From contig NW_021832986.1 in assembly GCF_006345805.1 (NCBI RefSeq), forward strand, positions 5,054 through 69,053: 64,000 bases of DNA, in the 5' to 3' direction. Below are positions 2,846 to 63,718 of the stretch, piece after piece. The notes below the pieces were generated by a model. It had not been told where the DNA came from. It searched no databases and was given only the letters and a program-made list of their open reading frames with translations. This DNA is from Octopus sinensis (taxonomy: Eukaryota). Within the stretch, counting starts at the first letter, position 1; each line of letters opens with the position of its first letter. Made by a program: the position numbers and the translations under genes.

Positions 2846-4122
2846 ATCGCCATCACAACAACACTGTCTAACTTGCTAATAATATATTTCATTAAATGAA
2901 TCCACATTTAATTTATTAATTTACAGATCCTCCCTGTGAACTCCCTGATCGAAATATTCAATTACTTGCAACTGTCGAACTTGATCTCTTTCCAACGCAT
3001 ATGGCGATACTTCAACCTATTGTTGCAACAGTAATCGTTTACTAGTTATCTTAGCCATTTTTAGGGCTTGTTATTTTTTTGGGCATTTATGCGAGGGAAA
3101 TTATACCAAACACCTCCACCATCAAACAATCTTTGTCCGGTTGTGCTATGGAGTTGATCTTTTCCAAAAAACCAACGCTGTACATGCCTCTTACTGTTTC
3201 AGGGACTCGACTCCCTGTTTTCCCGGGACCTACTGACCGATGACGTCAAGAGCATTGCTCGCTTCCTTCTCAAGTCGTCCATTCGTAGCTTCGCCAAACT
3301 GTTGTTACTCGTCGGAAGGTTTCCTTAAAGTGGCCCGTCTTTAGGTTTGACGTGTTAGAATGCTTTATGACGCAACTTGATCTATCAGGCCAGCTCCTCC
3401 CAGTGCCATGAGGGACTTTTTCTCAAGTCTTCAATTCTCTGTTGAATGCAATGGCTGGGTCAATGACTTTATTTTTAAATTGCCTGACGTTTCTGCAGTT
3501 TTAACCTGGCTGGATTTATTGCTGTTTATTAACCATCCTCCTGTCAATCTGGCGACGTCCACATCAGTGCTTTTCAGGCACTGGTATAGAATGGTTTCTT
3601 CTCAAATTTCTCTAGCAGGTGTACAAATTGAATCTCTTTCAGTTCCTTAAATGTCAATCCCATCGCTTTGGCAATTTTGTACTTTAAAAAAACGAAATTC
3701 ACATTTGTATTCATATGTGTTGTTCTTTTTTGTATGGCCCTTCGTATTTCTGCTCTTCTTAAGTTGTTGGCTTTGTGTTCAATGTTTTCAAAAAAACTGT
3801 AGCAGCATTTGTTTAATTTTATTGCACATAGAGAATAAGACCCCGACCAGTTTATCTTTTGTGAAATATGATTTTTGCTAATGTTTTTTGATTGTCCGTT
3901 AGGATTTGCATATAAATTACTTTTAGAAAGATTACAAATCGAACTTTAAAATTCGAAAATATATAGCGTAGTCACAAAACAGAAAAACAATTATCTGAAA
4001 TAAATAGACTATCCAAGAAAATAAAAAATAGTTAATTTTATACTTATAAAGAAAAATTTCGAATCACATCCTAAAAATTTGACGACAAAACTTTAGACAA
4101 AAATATCATTTACCACCGCCAA

Positions 4123-4209
4123 ATCGGCTGGCTGTACCAGAGGATATCGATCGCAATCTTGCGAGGTAACTCGCTTGCAATCCGAGGTGCAGCCACTGCT
4201 GACACTTAA
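4123..4209 (+). mobile_element. CRE-like retrotransposon extreme 3' fragment
   Basis: IGWLYQRISIAILRGNSLAIRGAATADT*, the C-terminus of the restriction-like endonuclease (RLE). Confidence 0.75.
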
Positions 4210-5273
4210 TTAGTTATTTTGAAGAACTCTTTTTCGATTATAACAAATTTTGTATTAAAAAAAAATATATCATTTAAATCTAAAAAAATCGGAAGTAAAA
4301 TTAAATGGGTCTAATGAGGGTTCTTCGTGCAAATAAAAATCAACAAACCAACCTGTTTAACGAAAGAGAGAGTTACGAAAATTTCAATGACTATCGGCTG
4401 GAAGATAAAGTCTTCGCTGAGTTCTGGTATTTTGTTAGCTCTGTTTTTTTGTATGCTTTTGCTGCTAACTTTGGATCAGAAGCCGAGTTAGCGAGATTGA
4501 ATTTCGAGAATGCGTTCCATTTTCACAGAAGAGCATAGGGGATTCCAATTAAGCTGGAATGTACTCGGAATCAAAGGCGTGATTTTGTTGAGTGATTTTG
4601 TTGAGTGCTTTATGTCTCGGAAAATTCCCTGTACTGCGCCTACAAGAGAACATATCTGCCCAGTTCATTTAGAGTCGATCCACATTTGCATCCGCATGGA
4701 GAGCATATTTTAAAAAATAGATGTAGGCATATACCAACACGTAAACTCTCGTTATCAAGCTTGCAACCAATCAAAGAAAGTAAGCAGGCTTATAAAAAAA
4801 CTTCAACTCGCAAAAGATATGGAAACACAAAGTGACCACCTGTTGCTTGCAAGAGATAAAAATAGCAGAAAAAGGAAGCTCTAAGATGGCAGATTACACG
4901 CTTATTATTCTTCCAAAGATCTGTCGTCACTACGGGATTTGTAATCAATTGAAATTTAAACAAAAACGTATCCAGGGTGTGGTCCGTCTTGAATAAAATT
5001 TCATTGCTTCAAATTATAATATGTACGCGCAAATAACAGGGGGGCATTGAAACGCCTATGTGGAAAGATATTAATTCTATCGCTAGAAAAACTTAATTAA
5101 TAGCTAAATATAAAAGAATAAAAGTAATGTAAATTTTCTTATAGTTTTATAAGATAAATATAATTAATAAGTATAAAAATTAAATCTATTATATTTGTTA
5201 CTATGCATACAAATAAACAACCCTGTTTTTAACTGATAGAATAATTGTTGCCCTCCGAAAATCATTTTTGTAT

Positions 5274-5462
5274 GTCGCTTCTCGGCCTTTTGGCTAAGAT
5301 CAAAGTGTAGTATCTGTTCTTTCCAGCTTTATATCTGGGACGCCCTTACACGGGGCAAGATATAATGCTTATTTTTGTGCCTTGGTATGTGCTGCGAAGC
5401 TTGCTTCCTCCATACCGCGCGTCCTCCCGGTATTGCAGTACTTCCGGGTTGGGCGCATTCCC
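5274..5462 (+). ncRNA. RNU2: U2 spliceosomal snRNA
   Basis: Starts GTCGCTTCTCGGCCTTTTGGCTAAGATCAAAGTGTAGTATCTGTTC, with the branch-site recognition sequence GTGTAGTA, an Sm site ATTTTTG and the stem IV loop ATTGCAGTAC. Confidence 0.97.
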
Positions 5463-5679
5463 TTTTGGGAGTTTTTATTATTTAAATCTACTTATGCAAA
5501 CTAAATGGGTTGTTTAACTCTCGTTGTTGTGGTGTTGTAATTTACACAATGGGGAAAGACCTGGCACCCTACCCCGTTTCTTCTTGTTGCTTTGCAAATT
5601 TTTCTGACAAATCCTTCACGGATCCTTCTGCCCAAATTGTCAATAACGTTAACCCTTTTCCTACTAATCTGCGCGAATC

Positions 5680-6012
5680 TTGAACACTGTCCAAAGCTCA
5701 CAGCAAAAGAGTAGACTCACTGGAATTATAGTGCTGGCGCAAACTTTTGAACATAAATTGGTAGAACCTACACTGTCGCTTGTGGCGAAAGTTTGGAAGC
5801 AACAATTATCATATTTGGGGCACGTACTTCGGGGGAATGGTATAGGAAAAGAAATCCTGCTGTCTTCGTTCGCTGGAAAAAGGAAGTGAAACTTACCGGA
5901 CATCATTTGTCGGAATTAGCAGAGCTGGTGGGGGATAGAGTTTCGTGGAGGGACTTGTCTTACAGAATCGCCAATGGCCGGAATCGGCTGATTATGGCTT
6001 AACTTAACTTTT
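5680..6012 (+). mobile_element. RTE-clade LINE 3' end
   Basis: KQQLSYLGHVLRG...FAGKR...RWKKEV...DRVSWR, followed by a short (TTAAC)n tail. Confidence 0.75.
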
Positions 6013-6022
6013 CAAGTTAAAG

Positions 6023-6433
6023 TTAAAGAATTTTTTGAGGTACAGCTAGACCATCTGTGAGCTGCCGTCTTTTTACGACACTGTCACCACGCAGGATAGC
6101 TAAGTGTTTAGTACGCGGTATGAAATGTTTCTCTTCCATGCCTGTGTCTTCATTGCGGATAAAAACGATGCATTTATTCTTCTGAACGCCCTTGAAATCA
6201 ACAATACTATCAATCTTAGCAATTTCAGCATCTTCTCCCTGTCGACACGCTTTCAAAAAGCTTGGCAACTTGAGGAATACCACCGGTAATATCCTTTGTT
6301 CTACTCGCACCACGAGGCAAACGTGCCAAAATTTCACCAGCGCTAGCGCTCTGTCCATCACCGACAGAAATAAAAGCCCTTGAAGGAATGGCATAGTTAC
6401 CAATCAGTTGTTTCTCTCTGCATCATCTGCAAC
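6023..6433 (-). pseudogene. rpoC: Decayed fragment of a bacterial RNA polymerase beta' subunit, Chlamydiae-like
   Basis: With two frameshifts it reads [135 protein letters not shown]. This includes the rpoC motif KDITGG(L)P. Confidence 0.9.
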
Positions 6434-7108
6434 GTGGTTAACAAAAAGAAGAGGGGCCGATCTTTCTCTTCTTGTACGCAGTTCTTTCACCTTTCACGCG
6501 TTTCTCTAGCTCGCCTCACGTCAGAACGCCTTCCAACCTGGGTCTGTCGCGCCTGTCTTTCTGGCGCCTCATCATTGCCATCCCCTCTTGCCATTTCTTG
6601 TTCTTGCCATTCTCCTGACCACTTCCCTTTTCCCGACTCCATCCCCATTTCTGAGACCTGTTCTATCTCTTTCGTTCTCAAATCTATCAAACTTTTCCGC
6701 CGTCTCCGGCCAATCCTAAGGCTCCTCGTACCCTGGCAACTTCCTCCTTGTCCTTAGCTTCTGATGGGCAATCCGATTGGCTTAAATTGTTTGGTTTTGC
6801 TTCTTTTGGCCTCGGGTTTCTTTCAGCCCGAGACCGTAATAAAACCTCCTCTCCTTCGCTATCCACGATTGTTAAACAAGAACTGGGTTTGTACGATCTG
6901 AATTGTTTTTCTCTTCGCTGGCTTGAGGACTATCTCGCTAAATCAGAGCCGTCCACTAGCCACTTCAACAACAGAAAAAGTTAAAATAAAAATTTTCCTA
7001 CTTGACAGAAATAAATAAATTCATTAAAACCTAAATGAAAAATGACCATCTAGCACCCCATTTTATTTTAAGAACTTCAAAATTAATAACGGATATCAAA
7101 AAACAATT

Positions 7109-7532
7109 GGGAAAAGACCCGATGGAATGACCACTTTTCCCTACTCCTGTGGAAAATCGTTGGTTTGGGATTCAACGTGTGTTGACACCCATTCCAAAAC
7201 TAATATGATCTCTTCTGCTGTTTCTCCAGGTTCTGCAGCAGATGCTGCAGAGCAGAGAAAAATTGCCAAATACGCAAATCTTGGACAACGGTACCGCTTC
7301 GTACCTATCGCTGTGGAGACTTCTGGGGTAACCGGCCCTCTTACGACTTCTTTCATCAGAGAAGTCGGAGAAAAAGTTGCTAGGCGACGTGGGGAGCCTC
7401 GAGAAGTGTCATGGTTATTCCAACAAATTGGAATAGCTGTCGTTCGCGGCAATGCACACTCCATCATGCGTGCAACTGAAGTGCCTTTTAATCATTGACT
7501 AACTTAATAAAATAAAACAATAAAGTAAAAAA
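7109..7532 (+). mobile_element. 5'-truncated CRE-like retrotransposon (RLE domain plus A-tail)
   Basis: GKRPDGMTTFPYSCGKSLVWDSTCVDT...FVPIAVETSG...IAVVRGNA. Has an A-rich tail and a candidate TSD AAAAAACAATT at 7098-7108 and 7533-7543. Confidence 0.9.
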
Positions 7533-7734
7533 AAAAAACAATTAGTAAAATAATCAAAAAATTCACTAATTTAGTAAATCAATAATCGATTAAAATTATT
7601 TTTATCAAGGGTCAAATTGATAATAAAAAGTTCTTTTGATGAATTAATTTATGTTATTAAGAAAATAGTATAAAGAGTAATAAGAAAAAAATGAAAATTA
7701 TTTTAGCACCTGATTCTATCTATTTGGTATCTAT

Positions 7735-8000
7735 CATTTTGTCTAAACTAAAAGTCAATTTTCAACACGATATGCGTAAAAGTTGAATTAGATGTTCATC
7801 AGTCAATCGGTTTCGATTTTTTATTTCCATAAGTTTGCTTAAGATAACATTACACGCATACGTTGATCCGAAAACTGATGTACTTTTTATGGGACAGAGT
7901 TTGGATATTTCCACTGTGAGATTCGACTCCAAAATTTTAATAACTCATCTTACATAAATACCGCAGTAAGTTGTAAATCTGACTGTATTTCAGGTAGCTT
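7735..8000 (-). mobile_element. Degenerate hAT transposase C-terminal (dimerisation) fragment
   Basis: Across frames: LLKFWSRISQWKYPN...VFGSTYAC...KNRNRLTDEHLIQLLRI. Confidence 0.75.
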
Positions 8001-9029: not shown

Positions 9030-9330
9030 TTAATGGCCTAAAGAGACGCTCGGCCACCCCCGCGAATAGCAAAACCATTCCCACGGATCACAGCAATCTA
9101 CAGACGTTCCAAGAGCCAAGATAACTCTCTCGAATCGTGTCTTATCCTTGATATCCGTCGATCGAACGAACAAAAGAAGCGGAGCGTCGTGGCGTTGAAG
9201 ATCCCCGAAAAATCCAACGCAATTGGAGTAAAAAAAGTGAGTATGAGAGATGGCCATACTTTAGAATCTTGCGATTCTCGGCCAGCCTCGACGCGTACCC
9301 AGGATCAACAGCGGACAAGGCAAGATTTCT
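9030..9330 (-). mobile_element. CRE-like retrotransposon 3' fragment
   Basis: LALSAVDPGYASRLAENRKILKY...ELSWLLERL*IAVIRGNGFAIRGG. Its DNA is close to the copy at 45711-45808. Confidence 0.85.
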
Positions 9331-9699
9331 GCGCAAAGAGAAGAGAAGAAGCGCTTTACGCGGGGCGAATAGGCAAACAATTCCAGCGAATAATTGACAA
9401 AGAAACACGCAAAAACAACCAGCTAGTTTTTTGGGTGTTGCATGTTTTGCATGCTCTTTTGAGAAAGCCCACCAAGAAAATAAATTCGCGTTCGTTCACT
9501 CTAAGAATACATCTGGTTTTGATAGCAATAGGAGTCAGCATAAAGTCTTTGCTGATAGTTAAGTATAAATATTATTTGGTCAAATTTTGATATCAATTTG
9601 TAGTTCTATATGAGATGGACAAAATATGTTATTAGTTAGTGTTGGTAGGCAATTGCAAACTATTATTAAATAAACAGTTTTTACTGTAGGATTCTTGAG

Positions 9700-17422: not shown

Positions 17423-17957
17423 TTTTGCGGGATTCCATCGACCTGAACCTATTGGGCTCTGCCGCAGTGACGGAAAGCGTCCGACGGGATGACTATATTC
17501 CCCTTTAGAGGAGGAAGGTCTCTTGTTTGGATGTAACTTGCGTCGACTCCTTTCAGATACTGTGCTCACAGGAACAGCCAGTACACCAGGCTACGCATGT
17601 GCGCTGGCAGAAGAAAGGAAGTTGACGAAGTACGCTGTGCTTTCCCGAACGTCGTTGAGTTTGTCCCCCTAGCCTTTGAGACCTCAGGTGTGGTTGGAAA
17701 GAAGGTAGAAAATCTGTTACGGGTTGTGGGAGGAAGAATCTCACAGAATACAAATGACCGGAGGAGACGAGCTGGCTTTTCCAGCGCATCTCGGTTGCAA
17801 TTCTTCGCGGGAACTGCCTCTCTATCCGCAGTGCTTCGTCGTCGGACTAACCCTCAAGTTCACGACATTAATTCTCTATTAATTAATTTGACTTTAACAA
17901 AAAAATTTATAAAAAAAAAAAATTTATAAAATAAATATTTTTGAATACTAATCCAAG
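17423..17957 (+). mobile_element. 5'-truncated CRE-like retrotransposon, frameshifted
   Basis: EPIGLCRSDGKRP...FPFRGGRSLV.DVTCVDS...FVPLAFETSGVVG. Has an A-tail and a candidate TSD TTCATAACTAATT at 17410-17422 and 17958-17970. Confidence 0.85.
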
Positions 17958-18496: not shown

Positions 18497-21400
18497 ATGG
18501 AGTACTTTAACTTATATTTCAAACGTTTTGATTATTTCCAATCCCAGTCTGATATCGACTTCACAAAATTGATAAATCTTGTATATATAACTATATCCTT
18601 AAATATAGTGCGTGATGAAGTATGGCGAAAGTCCCGCTTCATTTAAGTCTGAAATAGAAAAATTCAATAATTTAAGAAACGTTGATTAAAAAAATGGTAT
18701 TTTAGATTGCTTGTGAATTGGATCTGTCCGACGTCAAAGATTTAAAAACATATTATTGCCAATTGCGATTTCTGAAAGCCCGTGTAACCGAAGAATTGGT
18801 TTCATCTTCGGATATTGACTTCTCATGGTTTTTTTAGTTTTTAAATTCTAGGTTGGATGGTTTCACAAATGAAAATTATGTATCCAGTTATATTGAATTA
18901 GAGGAAATGGCAATTCTTTATAACATAGCTTTAAAGCTTCCCCATTCTGTCGAAGTAAGCTCTTTTGATAACCAGGACTCTGTAACTCTTTATTGGTAAT
19001 ATTTAGTATTTGAGAGCACTGTGCATTGCTTTTCAGAAATCTGCAGGCTGTTTTAAAATGTTGTCCGATTGTTTGTTTGATTTTGGTGATAATTTAAATC
19101 CGACGGAATTACGGATTCATGAACGTATATTTTTGGTGTTGCTCACTTATTCGTTAAACATAGATATTCGCTCAGATCTGTGTATATCTTAAATGCAGCA
19201 ACGAGGCTTCTGGAAAGTCTGCAATTCCTTTTATTTCTCTCTTTATAATTGAATCTTTAGAAATATTAAAACGAGACGTAAGTAAATCTCGTTCTAAAAA
19301 GTCTTTTATTCAAGTTTTGATTATTTTGATATTTGATAGTTAAGAACCACGTGGGCTGATGGAATTCAGTGTTATTTCAAATTTATGCTTAACCGATATT
19401 ATGCGATCAAAGAGCTGGATTCTAAGGAATATGGACGTGGATTGCGTTTCTACCAGAATGCCCTCGATTCGCTCAAGATTTGTTTAAATAGTCGCTTCAA
19501 GGTGACATCTTTATCCAAATAATCAAAATTTAAAAAATTAACTTAAATATTTTTAATTAATGTTTTCAAGGATATCATCCCTGATTGGTCCGAACTCAAA
19601 AAAATAGAAGTAACGGTCAAAAATGAGTGATTTTTTATTTTACAATTATATTAGGTATCAATCCGCTAAAAAGACAAATGATATTGTTTATTACCAATCA
19701 GTCCCAGATTTGATAGATTTTCCAGTATCAGGTTTATAAATGAATTTATACACCTAGGAAAACAATTTGTTCAATCAATCACATTTAATATTTATGATTC
19801 CTCAGAATGTGGTTCTCAGGATTTATTTTCTCGCCTTGTTTCTCTTAAGAACTATGAAACGTCATCAATTTATAGGTTTTTTTATTTTGGTATTTATTGA
19901 TAATTTAGCGAACACAAAGCACAACTTTTAAGATCAATACAAGATGAAATATATACTAATGAACAAAAGATTGAGTTTTAATTTTCACAAATGATATTTA
20001 TTTTAGTAATGAAATGAAAGGATTTAAGTTTAAAATTGTTAAAGATATTATAAATGGCAATTTGGGCGATTTATCCGAACGTATAACAAAATGTATGCAT
20101 TTTGCAGACAATAATACCGATAAGTATGATAAACTGATTAGTCAGCATTCCGGTATGGTAAACCTATCCATTTTTTTGATTATTATTCATCTGTTTAAAA
20201 AATATTTATAATAACATTTTATAAGACTATTATAATTCTTTATTTTCTTAGAATTGTCGAATTTATTGGAACAAATTGAGGATAAAATTAAATCAGTACA
20301 GTTAAAGGTTGATGGCATGGTAAATTAAAATTTATTTTATTTTAGGATTCTTCACAGAAAGATGGAGAGAAAATGCGATTCGAAAAATTCAAAAATGACT
20401 ACAGTTCTTTATCCGCAGGTGACAGAGAGATTCTCGACGCAGTTGATCAATTAATATCAATATTGACATTGCTAAGAGACAGGAGAGCTCTTAGAAAACA
20501 TTTATCGGATCCCTTAGAATTTGTCGGTTTTTATAAAATACATACATATTTAGATGATGTGGTTATGAAAGATGCTTATATCTTCCAAGAAATGAACGAA
20601 AAGATTGTCAAGCTGAGAGATCAACTTGAAGATTTGGTGAATAGACTGAGAGAGGATATGCAGAATGATGATTTGACTCAAAAATTAGCTCAAAATCCAT
20701 CTCAACCGGACAAAGTTTTATTAGCTTTTGATACTGTTTTTCAGGATTTTTTTGAAAAAAGGCTAAATTTATTTGATCCCAATCTGAAGCTCATTCGTGA
20801 AAACATGGCCAAACAATCTGAATTATTTGAAGATTTGTCCAAACACCATTTGAAGATGTTTTATTCACTAAAACAAATTTATGAGGCAAAGGAATCGTGT
20901 TTGATTATCTTTTTTACCCTATAGCCGAGAGGACGACGAATCCGACTTTAAATTGCGGTTGGATTTGATTGACGAAGTTATTTTAAATGCTAATGAAGCA
21001 ATTGAATCACGTAAAAAAACCCTTCAACAATTTAATAATATTTTGTCTTCATTTCAGATGCAAAAGTCAGCTCCTAAAGTTCCTCCTCGCACAGCAAATG
21101 GTATAAACTATTTTGTGTTTAATATTCTCTAGTAAGCGATTTGGGGAAACTCGATTCGTATGTTCCATTAGGTCCTATAGGCTATAATGCTCCAAATAAC
21201 CTGCCAAACATTCTTCCTCTGAGTATGAATAATCCTCGAATGCCTCTGACGACTTCCTCTACTTTTGGCCAAAATCCTCACTTGAATCCATTAAATCCTC
21301 ACTGGGAACAAATTCCGAGTTATCATCCTAATCGTTTTCCAATACAAAATCAAGCTGATCCTACAATGAGACAAAAAACTCAGAATGTTTTTGAACAGCC

Positions 21401-21770
21401 CAATTCTTTTGAAATAACTAATTTCGATACGAAATCTAATCACCCGTTTGCTACTTTTGATCAAACTGCTCGTTTGAACCCATTAAATCCTCACTGGGAA
21501 CAAAATCCTAGCTATCTCCCGAATATTTATCAAATACAAAATACAGCCGATGTGAGACCAAGACCTTATAATATTTCTGAACAACCAAAGCCCTCGAATT
21601 ATTACGAAAACGACCCTCGTGCTTATTTAAATTATATTAACTCGTATGATCCACGGACTCAATTCCAGACTCGTTTTGGACCTTCGAATCAATTTTCAAA
21701 CATTTCTAAAAATCCATATTTCATAAAGGACATGGAAAAAAAATTAGCTGAACAGGAAAAAAATAAATAG
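18497..21770 (+). CDS. BRO1-domain ESCRT accessory protein (HD-PTP/ALIX family)
   Basis: Spliced KTYYCQLRFLKARV...FSWLDGFT...EEMAILYNI...IAFQKSAGCF...IFAQICVYLK, then a helical V-domain-like exon (20373-20924) and a Pro/Asn-rich tail. One apparent 1-bp frameshift near 18934. Confidence 0.8.
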
Positions 21771-62328: not shown

Positions 62329-63718
62329 CCTTTACTAATGTTTTGCATTTTAGCAATTTCACGTTTAGATAATAAATTTTTTGTCAAATCTGTAATAATT
62401 TTAGATTTTATATCTTTAGTGAGAAAGTGCATACTCATAAAAAATAAACTAACGTGGTAATAAAAATAAATTGACAAAAATGCTTTAAAATCAAAAAAAT
62501 TAATTAAAATTAAACTTAATTTTTTTGCCACAATTCGAGTTTTATAAAATTGTTGTGGACATAAAAAATCATTAATTACTGGCATGGACCAAAATACGAG
62601 GGTGCCCCAACAATTTCTCACAATGTGAGGGTGCTCCAAAAAGGGGGTCTGGCTGGGGTCGGACTGTATTAGTTTATTATCAAAATCGGCCGAAGCAGGG
62701 AACGAAGACAAATTTATATCAAACTTAATTGAGGACCTTCCTAATTAGAAGGTTTATTGGCGTGGAGCTGAATACTTTATTCATTCAAAAGCTAAACTTT
62801 TATCGAAAGTTCTTATTCCAACAGACCAGAATTATCATTAATGGTGTTAATCATTGACAAAGATAGTTTTATATATAAATTACATACCTAATCCAAATAA
62901 AATCGAGCTTTTCATGACACTGATGATTTTAGAGTAATTAAATGCATGCCAATTTTTAAATAAAATAGTTAAAATGGGTGTAAATGAAAAAATCGTTTTA
63001 TTCTGACATTTACGTTGGAGTATGGAACATTTAGTTGAACTGTCTGACTTAGAGAAGAATTCAAATAAATCAGCTACCACTTGTTATTTATTGAAAAATT
63101 CTTGAATAACACGATGGGCCATCTGGGAACTAGATTCAATAAACGCTCATTTCAGATTACATTAAAACATAATGAGATTGTGAGATGAATTTACATTAAA
63201 AACATTGATTTAGAATGAAACTAAAAGATTAAAAAACTACTCAATTTAGATTATTATGTCAAATAGTTTGTTTATTAATAAAAGGACTAGAGAAAAATGG
63301 TCATTGGCAGATAGCCAGAGTATTGCCTCTGACTATGGCTATAGATATTCGTTCGGTTAAATACCGGTACTCACACGGGTCGCCGGTAACCCTTTTTATT
63401 AGTGAGCCAATCCGCTGGAGTAGAGTCCGAGTAGAAACCTCCTTGTATTCCTGACGTCTCAGCAACCAAGGGGACAAACACTCTGTCATTCCCAATTCCA
63501 TTCCCAACTCACTCTTCCTCTTCTCAGCCCGTTCAGACGGGGCTCCCGGATTTTCGATACACAACTTGATATTCTGATGTTTATTTGAAAATATACATTG
63601 CAAAAAGAGCCGTAACTAAGATAAACATTATATAAAAACCTGATATGTATTCATTTAAGAAAAAAATGATAATCTAATGTGAATTATTGAAGTTGCTGCC
63701 ACCGCAATAGATAATCTA
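62329..63718 (+). repeat. Direct duplication, copy 2 (contains Tigger 5' end and CRE fragment 63299-63480)
   Basis: Matches 38706-40076 and retains a 16-bp segment that is deleted in copy 1. Confidence 0.95.

What the first reader, a model, noticed from the sequence alone, without database searches (positions are those of the whole stretch)
6023..6433. Fossil Chlamydiae-type rpoC fragment inside an animal nuclear genome
Seen in the sequence: after two frameshift corrections (near 6411 and 6252), about 135 codons read [17 protein letters not shown]...[27 protein letters not shown]...[17 protein letters not shown]...[15 protein letters not shown]...[22 protein letters not shown]. From memory, this is collinear with Chlamydia RpoC (GTYAIPSGAIISVEEGQ...[29 protein letters not shown]...IAKIDGVVDFKGIQKNK...TGMEEEHLIPLTKHL...RGDSVIKGQQLTDGLVVPHEIL) and fits proteobacterial RpoC much less well. 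It is decayed and flanked by eukaryotic DNA (U2 gene, RTE end, CRE copy), which argues for an old integration rather than a live contaminant. Inference: horizontal transfer from an intracellular chlamydial symbiont or pathogen, possibly recording an unknown association.
Basis: partly seen in the sequence, partly recalled or inferred. Interest (0 to 1): 0.88.

Follow-up and report, generated by a model that had tools for sequence, protein, structure and literature searches.

The report
Dead chlamydial rpoC fragment in eukaryote
A 385-base, broken piece of a Chlamydiae-type RNA polymerase gene (rpoC) sits among retrotransposon debris in an AT-rich eukaryotic genome, so it is most likely a non-functional relic of bacterial DNA picked up from a past intracellular chlamydial infection.

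Summary
On the minus strand, 6410..6026 reads 128 codons colinear, without gaps, with bacterial RpoC (beta') residues about 1099-1226, once one inserted base (6251) is skipped.

- **Strength of the match:** phmmer against 1.84 billion proteins gives E = 2e-36.
- **Donor:** identity is 56-69% to Chlamydiae (Neochlamydia, Protochlamydia, Parachlamydiaceae, a Chlamydia psittaci fragment). It is at most 51% to other PVC bacteria, 48% to Akkermansia and 37% to E. coli. In NJ bootstraps the sister group is wholly chlamydial in 99.7% of replicates. The family within Chlamydiae is unresolved.
- **Pseudogene:** there is one frameshift, it is cut off at both ends, and 6 of 22 universally invariant residues are replaced. 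No other rpoC, rpoB or neighbouring gene is found in the 64 kb.
- **Host context:** both flanks are host-type DNA. These include a U2 snRNA gene, a non-LTR retrotransposon tail that abuts the fragment, and a retroelement domain with at least 9 diverged copies on both sides. An ALIX-like gene lies further along.

I read it as a genuine, old, functionless nuclear insertion of chlamydial DNA, a new member of a known kind.

Not supported or not tested: the second frameshift near 6411, that the host is an animal, and read-level proof of the junctions.

The parts
6026..6410 (-). Fossil of a Chlamydiae-type rpoC (RNA polymerase beta' subunit): 128 codons, equal to residues 1099-1226 of a Parachlamydiaceae-like RpoC and about 1098-1221 of E. 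coli beta'. It is truncated at both ends.
   Evidence: It aligns without gaps to chlamydial RpoC once base 6251 is skipped. tblastn with full-length RpoC hits only this stretch in the window.
6251..6251 (-). Single inserted base (A in GAAAG) that shifts the reading frame between ...KLFE and ACRQGED...
   Evidence: Frame A ends at 6252 and frame B runs from 6250. With this base removed, all 128 codons are colinear with L002, L003 and L005 rpoC.
6014..6028 (+). (AAGTTA)2.5 short tandem repeat. It is the 3' tail of the plus-strand non-LTR retrotransposon remnant and directly abuts the fossil's truncated end. Its reverse complement supplies the apparent TAA stop.
   Evidence: Tandem Repeats Finder; sequence.
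5680..6002 (+). Degenerate, frameshifted C-terminal coding remnant of a non-LTR retrotransposon (...LSYLGHVLRGNGIGKE.../...DRVSWRDLSYRIANGRNRLIMA*).
   Evidence: translations. No other copy in the window. Reading it as a non-LTR C-terminus rests on general knowledge of such elements.
5274..5463 (+). Full-length U2 spliceosomal snRNA gene.
   Evidence: Rfam RF00004, 155 bits (gathering score 46), model positions 1-192.
6411..7090 (.). Unassigned spacer, 45-49% GC and purine-rich on the minus strand. It has no detectable homology to rpoC or to anything else tested.
7091..7498 (+). Copy of a retroelement C-terminal domain (...WDSTCVDT...FVPIAVETSG...VRGNAHSI...).
   Evidence: at least 9 diverged paralogues in the window (for example 36705-36367, 51683-52024, 17474-17838, 48116-47913, 9333-9065, 63597-63310, 57472-57546, 4117-4191), on both sides of the fossil.

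Best explanation
A short piece of chromosomal DNA from a bacterium of the phylum Chlamydiae became integrated into the nuclear genome of the eukaryote that owns this window. The piece covers codons about 1099-1226 of rpoC. It has since decayed neutrally and has no function: 128 codons out of about 1,400, without the catalytic centre, frameshifted, and with invariant residues replaced.

**Shown:**
- It is rpoC.
- Its nearest relatives are Chlamydiae.
- It is broken and isolated.
- It is embedded in host-type repeats on both sides.

**Inferred:**
- The DNA came from an intracellular chlamydia living in, or engulfed by, germline-accessible cells.
- It entered by end-joining repair of a chromosome break, as mitochondrial (NUMT) and Wolbachia fragments do. 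It may have entered together with, or later been cut by, the retrotransposon whose tail abuts it.
- The insertion is old. Neutral divergence since loss of constraint is up to about 0.13-0.16 substitutions per site, estimated from replaced invariant residues.
For: **Identity as rpoC.**

**Chlamydial affinity.**
- The best hits lie beside rpoB on 2.0 and 2.6 Mb metagenome contigs. Relatives of the L003 RpoC are named Neochlamydia, Protochlamydia, Parachlamydiaceae and Chlamydiales.
- A Chlamydia psittaci fragment is 66-67% identical.
- The identity distribution is bimodal, with Chlamydiae at 56-69% and everything else at or below 51%.
- NJ bootstraps agree, as do the signature columns.

**Pseudogene state.**
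- One inserted base.
- 6 of 22 universally invariant residues changed: L45I, R47Q, E50K, P57G, G68S, G114R. Also 20 of 81 Chlamydiae-conserved columns changed, against a mean of 0.56 in real sequences.
- At sites where three chlamydial references agree, changes fall on all codon positions (18/102, 10/109, 11/30). They are biased GC>AT (26/132) over AT>GC (7/106).
- The lack of internal stops is expected in 18-25% of neutral simulations at that divergence.

**Isolation.** Full-length RpoC, profiles of the flanking RpoC segments, and 12 kb chlamydial rpoB-rpoC loci match nothing else in the window.

**Host context.** U2 snRNA; RVT_1, rve and ALIX V-domain; the same retroelement family on both sides; window GC 33% against 43% in the fragment.
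Against: - No reads, coverage or second assembly could be examined, so the junctions at about 6026 and 6410 rest on the assembly alone.
- The host species is unknown, and the locus could not be found in any public collection searched.
- The low GC3 (32%) and the GC>AT bias could partly reflect an AT-rich donor rather than change after transfer. A 38% GC chlamydial contig shows a milder form of the same bias.
- One indel in 385 bases is rather few for the estimated divergence, so part of the divergence probably predates the transfer.
- The mechanism of entry is inferred, not shown. No target-site duplication or microhomology was found.
Confidence: 0.8

Rival explanations
1. Artefact: a contaminating or symbiont chlamydial read was joined to host sequence by library chimerism or misassembly, so nothing is integrated.
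For: Read-level evidence is unavailable. Chlamydiae are common in invertebrate and protist samples. Two short metagenome contigs (L005, L006) show that rpoC pieces joined to unrelated sequence do occur in assemblies.
Against: - It would need two misjoins only 385 bases apart.
- The piece carries a frameshift and replacements at 6 of 22 residues that are invariant across all sampled bacteria. A living bacterium's essential rpoC could not carry these.
- No other bacterial sequence is present in 64 kb.
- The same host repeat family lies on both sides.
Confidence: 0.05
2. The fragment is carried by a mobile element, through retrotransposon 3' transduction, template switching onto bacterial RNA, or capture by a transposon. 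It would then be one copy of a dispersed repeat rather than a primary insertion site.
For: - The (AAGTTA)n tail of a non-LTR element abuts the fossil with no spacer.
- Two unrelated metagenome contigs carry rpoC pieces that stop within 2-5 codons of the same point (after ...EIL). One of them starts at the window's frameshift site.
Against: - The fossil is in the opposite orientation and lies downstream of the element's tail. That is not the geometry of template switching, and not that of same-strand transduction either.
- There is no second copy in the window.
- L005 and L006 are no closer to the window than other Chlamydiae (67% amino-acid, 71% nucleotide identity) and share no flanks with it.
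Confidence: 0.08
3. The donor was not a member of Chlamydiae but another, unsampled PVC or related lineage with a convergently similar beta' segment.
For: The exact clade WINDOW+Chlamydiae has only 53-81% NJ bootstrap support, depending on how one divergent sequence (P0008) is treated. Only 128 columns are available, and named references are mostly Parachlamydiaceae.
Against: - There is a 5-18 point identity gap between Chlamydiae and all 160 other sequences.
- 8 of 12 Chlamydiae-specific columns are shared.
- The sister group is wholly chlamydial in 99.7% of replicates.
Confidence: 0.04
4. The fragment has been co-opted by the host, as an exon, small protein or RNA.
For: A 126-codon ORF (6403..6023) remains open across the frameshift. 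No internal stop is present.
Against: - The upstream half of that ORF is in the wrong frame and encodes unrelated residues.
- Open frames of this length are expected in about 20% of neutral simulations.
- Invariant residues are lost.
- No matching protein exists in 15 billion sequences.
- A 128-residue slice of beta' has no known autonomous activity.
Confidence: 0.03

Closest known systems
Nuclear insertions of endosymbiont DNA (for example Wolbachia fragments in insect and filarial nematode chromosomes; PMC2882956 and Nikoh et al. 2008 as cited in PMC13342648)
   Same: Short to long pieces of an intracellular bacterium's chromosome in the host nuclear genome. They are mostly pseudogenised, flanked by host repeats, without function, and useful as a record of past infection.
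   Different: The donor phylum here is Chlamydiae, not Alphaproteobacteria. Only one 385-base piece is seen, and neither the host nor a current symbiont is known.
NUMTs and NUPTs (organelle DNA fragments captured in nuclear double-strand-break repair)
   Same: The inferred mode of entry (end-joining capture of stray DNA), the small size, neutral decay, and association with repeat-rich DNA.
   Different: The source is a foreign bacterium rather than an organelle. Entry by end joining is inferred here, not demonstrated.
Genes of chlamydial origin reported in eukaryotes (for example rsmE, cox3 and fkpA-trmH signals in the Trichoplax project, PMC3641634; chlamydial genes in plants and algae, from general knowledge)
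   Same: A phylogenetic signal pointing to Chlamydiae in a eukaryotic genome assembly.
   Different: Those are intact, often expressed genes, or unplaced contigs whose status as transfer or contaminant is debated. This is a dead fragment of an essential information-processing gene, physically embedded in host repeats.
Bacterial RNA polymerase beta' subunit (RpoC) of Chlamydiae
   Same: 128 codons colinear with residues 1099-1226, at 56-69% identity, with lineage signature residues.
   Different: About 9% of the gene, lacking the catalytic NADFDGD centre and both termini. It is frameshifted, and 6 universally invariant residues are replaced. It is not a working member of the family.

Membership tests
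Bacterial RpoC (RNA polymerase beta') | Significant sequence homology to beta' over a colinear stretch | tested here: met
   PDB phmmer 3e-20, NCBIfam rpoC models about 1e-15, 2e-36 against 1.84 billion proteins.
Bacterial RpoC (RNA polymerase beta') | Full-length gene with the catalytic centre and an intact reading frame | tested here: not met
   Only residues about 1099-1226 are present, and a full-length RpoC query finds nothing else in the window. There is one frameshift at 6251. It is therefore a fragment or pseudogene, not a functional member.
Chlamydiae-lineage RpoC | Closer to named Chlamydiae than to any other lineage | tested here: met
   56-69% identity to Chlamydiae against at most 51% to others, 48% to Akkermansia and 37% to E. 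coli. The named relatives appear.
Chlamydiae-lineage RpoC | Groups with Chlamydiae in a phylogeny | tested here: met
   NJ with Kimura distance, 300 bootstraps: the sister group is wholly chlamydial in 99.7%, and the clade with all Chlamydiae-like sequences has 81% support. Only a distance method on 128 columns was used; ML was not available.
Chlamydiae-lineage RpoC | Assignment to a family within the phylum (Chlamydiaceae, Parachlamydiaceae, Simkaniaceae, Rhabdochlamydiaceae and so on) | tested here: inconclusive
   It is equidistant from a C. psittaci fragment (66.7%) and Parachlamydiaceae-like sequences (63-70%) on the same 84 columns. The sister taxon is unstable across bootstraps. No named Simkaniaceae, Rhabdochlamydiaceae or Waddliaceae sequences were on hand.
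Nuclear insertion of bacterial DNA (fossil lateral transfer) | Bacterial sequence flanked on both sides by host sequence in one contig | tested here: met
   On the left: U2 snRNA, a non-LTR remnant, and a copy of the repeated retroelement domain at 4117-4191. On the right: the same domain at 7091-7498 and many further copies.
Nuclear insertion of bacterial DNA (fossil lateral transfer) | Signs of residence without selection (pseudogenisation) | tested here: met
   Frameshift, truncation at both ends, and 6 of 22 universal invariants replaced, with changes on all codon positions.
Nuclear insertion of bacterial DNA (fossil lateral transfer) | Reads spanning the junctions at host depth; presence in independent individuals or at the orthologous site in relatives | not testable with these tools
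   No reads or host genome are available. Exact-protein and pattern look-ups in public collections found no second instance.
Functional horizontally acquired gene | Intact ORF, retained conserved residues, evidence of expression | tested here: not met
   The frame is broken and invariant residues are lost. Expression is not testable here.

The most novel reading that the evidence does not exclude
The fragment is the visible tip of a scattered set of chlamydial fossils in this genome. These would document a former germline-associated chlamydial symbiosis in a host lineage where none is known, and they could be dated through orthologous sites in related species. A still more speculative variant is that the same beta' sub-segment recurs as an isolated piece in unrelated assemblies (L005, L006) because some mobile or recombinogenic process picks it up.
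Probability: 0.15. Interest if true: 0.7.

Novelty: new member of a known kind. Interest (0 to 1): 0.42.

Why it matters
Dead pieces of endosymbiont DNA in host chromosomes are molecular fossils of past infections. They are abundant for Wolbachia. To my knowledge, and in the library searches run here, they are not described for Chlamydiae as pseudogene fragments embedded in host repeats.

If read evidence confirms it, this locus would show that chlamydial DNA reached the germline of this host lineage. It would give a datable marker of that association. It would also be a positive control for telling true integration apart from the chlamydial contamination that is common in invertebrate and protist assemblies.

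On its own, a single 385-base functionless fragment is a modest curiosity.

Tried and rejected
- **Word-index protein search with the 126-residue fragment** found nothing. With a small alignment it returned only short fragment proteins, so a full-length chlamydial RpoC rebuilt from L003 was needed to reach named relatives.
- **The single genome-contig scan** returned only an Akkermansia MAG by a chance word match. It gave a named PVC outgroup but no chlamydial genome.
- **The metagenome-contig scan** found no relative of the fossil.
- **Exact look-ups of four window ORFs** found no record, so the host species stays unidentified. PDB search with the ALIX-like exon gave nothing.
- **Upstream extension and second frameshift near 6411.** By eye one can align HVADDAE/KQLIGNY with IYADKEY/KELVGTY. 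However, a profile of the upstream 60 residues from 120 chlamydial RpoC gives no hit there. Rejected as unsupported.
- **Remainder of rpoC on the far side of the retrotransposon and U2.** Not found, so 'retrotransposon inserted into a longer fossil' is neither confirmed nor excluded.
- **U2-retrotransposon chimera by template switching.** Considered because U2 lies upstream on the same strand. No supporting junction or target-site duplication was found. Dropped.
- **L005 and L006 as sister fossils of the window.** Rejected. They are no closer than other Chlamydiae and share no flanks with it.
- **Cluster look-up for names** gave none.

Full report
**What is in the sequence.** The window is 33% G+C. 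On the minus strand, 6410..6252 reads [53 protein letters not shown]. After one extra base (A at 6251, in GAAAG), 6250..6026 reads [75 protein letters not shown], followed by TAA. With that one base skipped, the 128 codons align without a single gap to chlamydial RpoC.

**It is rpoC, far beyond chance.** phmmer against PDB chains gives beta' subunits only: best 3e-20, and E. coli beta' residues 1098-1221 at 1.7e-18. NCBIfam rpoC models score 4e-16 to 2e-15. HMMER against 1.84 billion representative proteins gives 1,290 hits, the best at 2.3e-36.

**Extent.**
- Near-full-length Akkermansia RpoC and a full-length chlamydial RpoC, used as tblastn queries against all 64 kb, match only 6026-6410.
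- Profiles of the 60 residues upstream and downstream of this segment, built from 120 chlamydial RpoC, find nothing anywhere in the window, including next to the fragment.
- tblastx against 12 kb rpoB-rpoC loci of two chlamydial genomes and one Akkermansia locus matches only 6019-6419.
- The region 5000-8000 has no DNA repeat elsewhere in the window.

So this is an isolated fragment of about 385 bases, roughly 9% of the gene, lacking the catalytic centre.

**Whose rpoC.** The best hits (62-70% identity) are short proteins from metagenomes.
- Two of them lie directly after rpoB on contigs of 2.03 and 2.64 Mb. The rpoC there is broken by frameshifts, which I take to be long-read assembly errors, so these are real bacterial genomes.
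- A full-length RpoC rebuilt from one of them (L003) retrieves 120 proteins at 81-96% identity. The named ones are Neochlamydia sp. TUME1, Candidatus Protochlamydia phocaeensis, Parachlamydiaceae bacterium, and Chlamydiales bacterium 38-26 and STE3.
- A 'Chlamydia psittaci, partial' fragment is also among the hits, at 66-67% identity.
- Over 272 distinct sequences the identity to the window is bimodal. 109 Chlamydiae-like sequences lie at 56-69%, and 160 others lie at 30-51%. That second group includes a 1,395-residue protein I take to be non-chlamydial PVC (51%), Akkermansia (48%) and E. coli (37%).
- The window keeps 8 of 12 columns that are at least 90% conserved in Chlamydiae and under 10% elsewhere.
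- In NJ trees (Kimura distance, 162 sequences, 300 bootstraps) the window's sister group is wholly Chlamydiae-like in 99.7% of replicates. The clade of the window plus all Chlamydiae-like sequences has 81% support, or 53% if the divergent P0008 is required to be outside.
- Within the phylum the position is unstable. The C. psittaci fragment and Parachlamydiaceae are equally distant on the same columns.

**It is dead.**
- Besides the frameshift and the double truncation, the window differs at 6 of 22 columns that are nearly invariant in every bacterium sampled. These include [13 protein letters not shown] read as [11 protein letters not shown], and KGQQLT read as KRRQLT.
- It also differs at 20 of 81 columns that are at least 97% conserved in the chlamydial set, which is mostly Parachlamydiaceae-like. 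Real chlamydial sequences differ there at 0.56 on average.
- At 241 nucleotide sites where three chlamydial references agree, the window differs at 18/102, 10/109 and 11/30 first, second and third codon positions. In the run of the same comparison (238 usable sites), the changes are biased G/C>A/T (26/132) over A/T>G/C (7/106).
- The loss of 27% of invariant residues corresponds in simulation to about 0.13-0.16 neutral substitutions per site. At that divergence 18-25% of simulated sequences still have no stop codon, so the open frames are not evidence of constraint.
- This figure is an upper bound on decay since transfer, because part of the divergence may belong to the donor lineage. One indel in 385 bases is on the low side.

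**Surroundings.**
- A full-length U2 snRNA (Rfam 155 bits) lies at 5274-5463.
- From about 5680 to 6002 the plus strand carries a frameshifted C-terminal remnant of a non-LTR retrotransposon. It ends ...RLIMA*, followed by a short 3' region and an (AAGTTA)2.5 tail at 6014-6028. This tail meets the fossil tail-to-tail with no spacer, and its complement supplies the TAA that seems to terminate the rpoC reading.
- On the other side, 6411-7090 is unassigned.
- 7091-7498 is a retroelement C-terminal domain with at least 9 diverged copies across the window, one of them (4117-4191) on the far side of the fossil.
- Elsewhere there are an RVT_1 reverse transcriptase, an rve integrase fragment, and an exon with an ALIX V-domain followed by a proline/asparagine-rich exon.

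The context is therefore a repeat-rich eukaryotic chromosome. I could not show that the host is an animal. A protist host would be natural for Parachlamydiaceae-like donors and is not excluded. The 'RTE' and 'CRE' labels were not tested.

**Most likely history.** A chlamydia was present in cells with access to the germline, or in the single cell of a protist. A fragment of its chromosome was captured in the nucleus and has since drifted. The most likely route is end-joining repair of a break, as for NUMTs and Wolbachia inserts. That route rests on established knowledge of those systems and is not shown here.

The abutting retrotransposon tail has two possible readings. Either the element later inserted at the fossil and removed the rest, though no remainder is found on its far side, or retrotransposon cDNA and bacterial DNA were captured together as filler. 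No target-site duplication or microhomology was found to decide between them.

**Artefact?** A contaminant joined by error would need two misjoins 385 bases apart, and it would carry an intact, conserved essential gene. The decay argues strongly against that. Only reads or PCR can close the question.

**Side observation.** Two short metagenome contigs carry chlamydial rpoC pieces that also cease to be rpoC just after ...EIL. L005 (1.1 kb, 38% GC) stops after EILDVC. L006 (1.45 kb, 37% GC, low coverage) stops after EILEICGV. The L006 piece begins at RPKD, which is the window's frameshift site, and it lies beside the last 45 residues of an ammonium transporter. They are about 71% identical to the window in DNA, no closer than other Chlamydiae, and share no flanks with it. 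They may be assembly chimeras. I leave the coincidence unexplained.

**Verdict.** It is a new member of a known kind (nuclear fossils of intracellular bacteria) with an unusual donor phylum. Interest is moderate.

Noticed in passing
L005:228-618 and L006:1177-1400 (metagenome contigs ERZ23488063 and ERZ840367): Two unrelated short contigs carry chlamydial rpoC pieces that stop being rpoC within 2-5 codons after the window fossil's end (...EIL). L006's piece starts at RPKD, the window's frameshift site, and sits next to an isolated 45-residue C-terminal fragment of an ammonium transporter. L005's rpoC has one in-frame stop and is followed by a convergent AlaDh_PNT_N-like ORF. These may be chimeric assemblies, or similar gene debris in other genomes.
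   Followed up: partly
window 5274-5463 (+): Full-length U2 snRNA (Rfam 155 bits) about 200 bases upstream of the non-LTR remnant on the same strand. A U2/retrotransposon template-switch chimera was considered, but no junction or target-site duplication supports it.
   Followed up: partly
window 7091-7498, 36367-36705, 51683-52024, 17474-17838, 47913-48116, 9065-9333, 63310-63597, 57472-57546, 4117-4191: At least nine diverged copies (27-64% amino-acid identity in tblastx) of one retroelement C-terminal domain (WD.TC.DT ... AVETSG ... RGN). It has no Pfam model and makes up a notable share of the window.
   Followed up: partly
window about 18850-21770 (+): A multi-exon host gene with short introns. 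One exon (20373-20924) matches the ALIX V-shaped domain (Pfam 4e-11), followed by a proline/asparagine/glutamine-rich exon. It is very divergent, with no PDB hit at E<0.01.
   Followed up: partly
window 5999-6028 (+): A near-perfect palindrome, TTAACTTAACTT-TTC-AAGTTAAAGTTAA, spans the retrotransposon 3' end and its (AAGTTA)n tail at the junction with the fossil. It may be a 3' stem-loop of the element or a by-product of the tail repeat.
   Followed up: no
window 6411-6800 (-): The spacer next to the fossil is unusually G+C-rich for this window (45-49%) and strongly purine-rich on the minus strand (GC skew down to -0.33 on the plus strand). Its origin is unknown.
   Followed up: no
L002 and L003 (ERZ25039458 contig_47407, 2.03 Mb; ERZ25039454 contig_3920, 2.64 Mb): Near-complete Parachlamydiaceae-like chromosomes in metagenome assemblies whose rpoB and rpoC are shattered by frameshifts, probably long-read errors. 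Such fragments surface as their own protein clusters and dominate searches made with short queries.
   Followed up: partly
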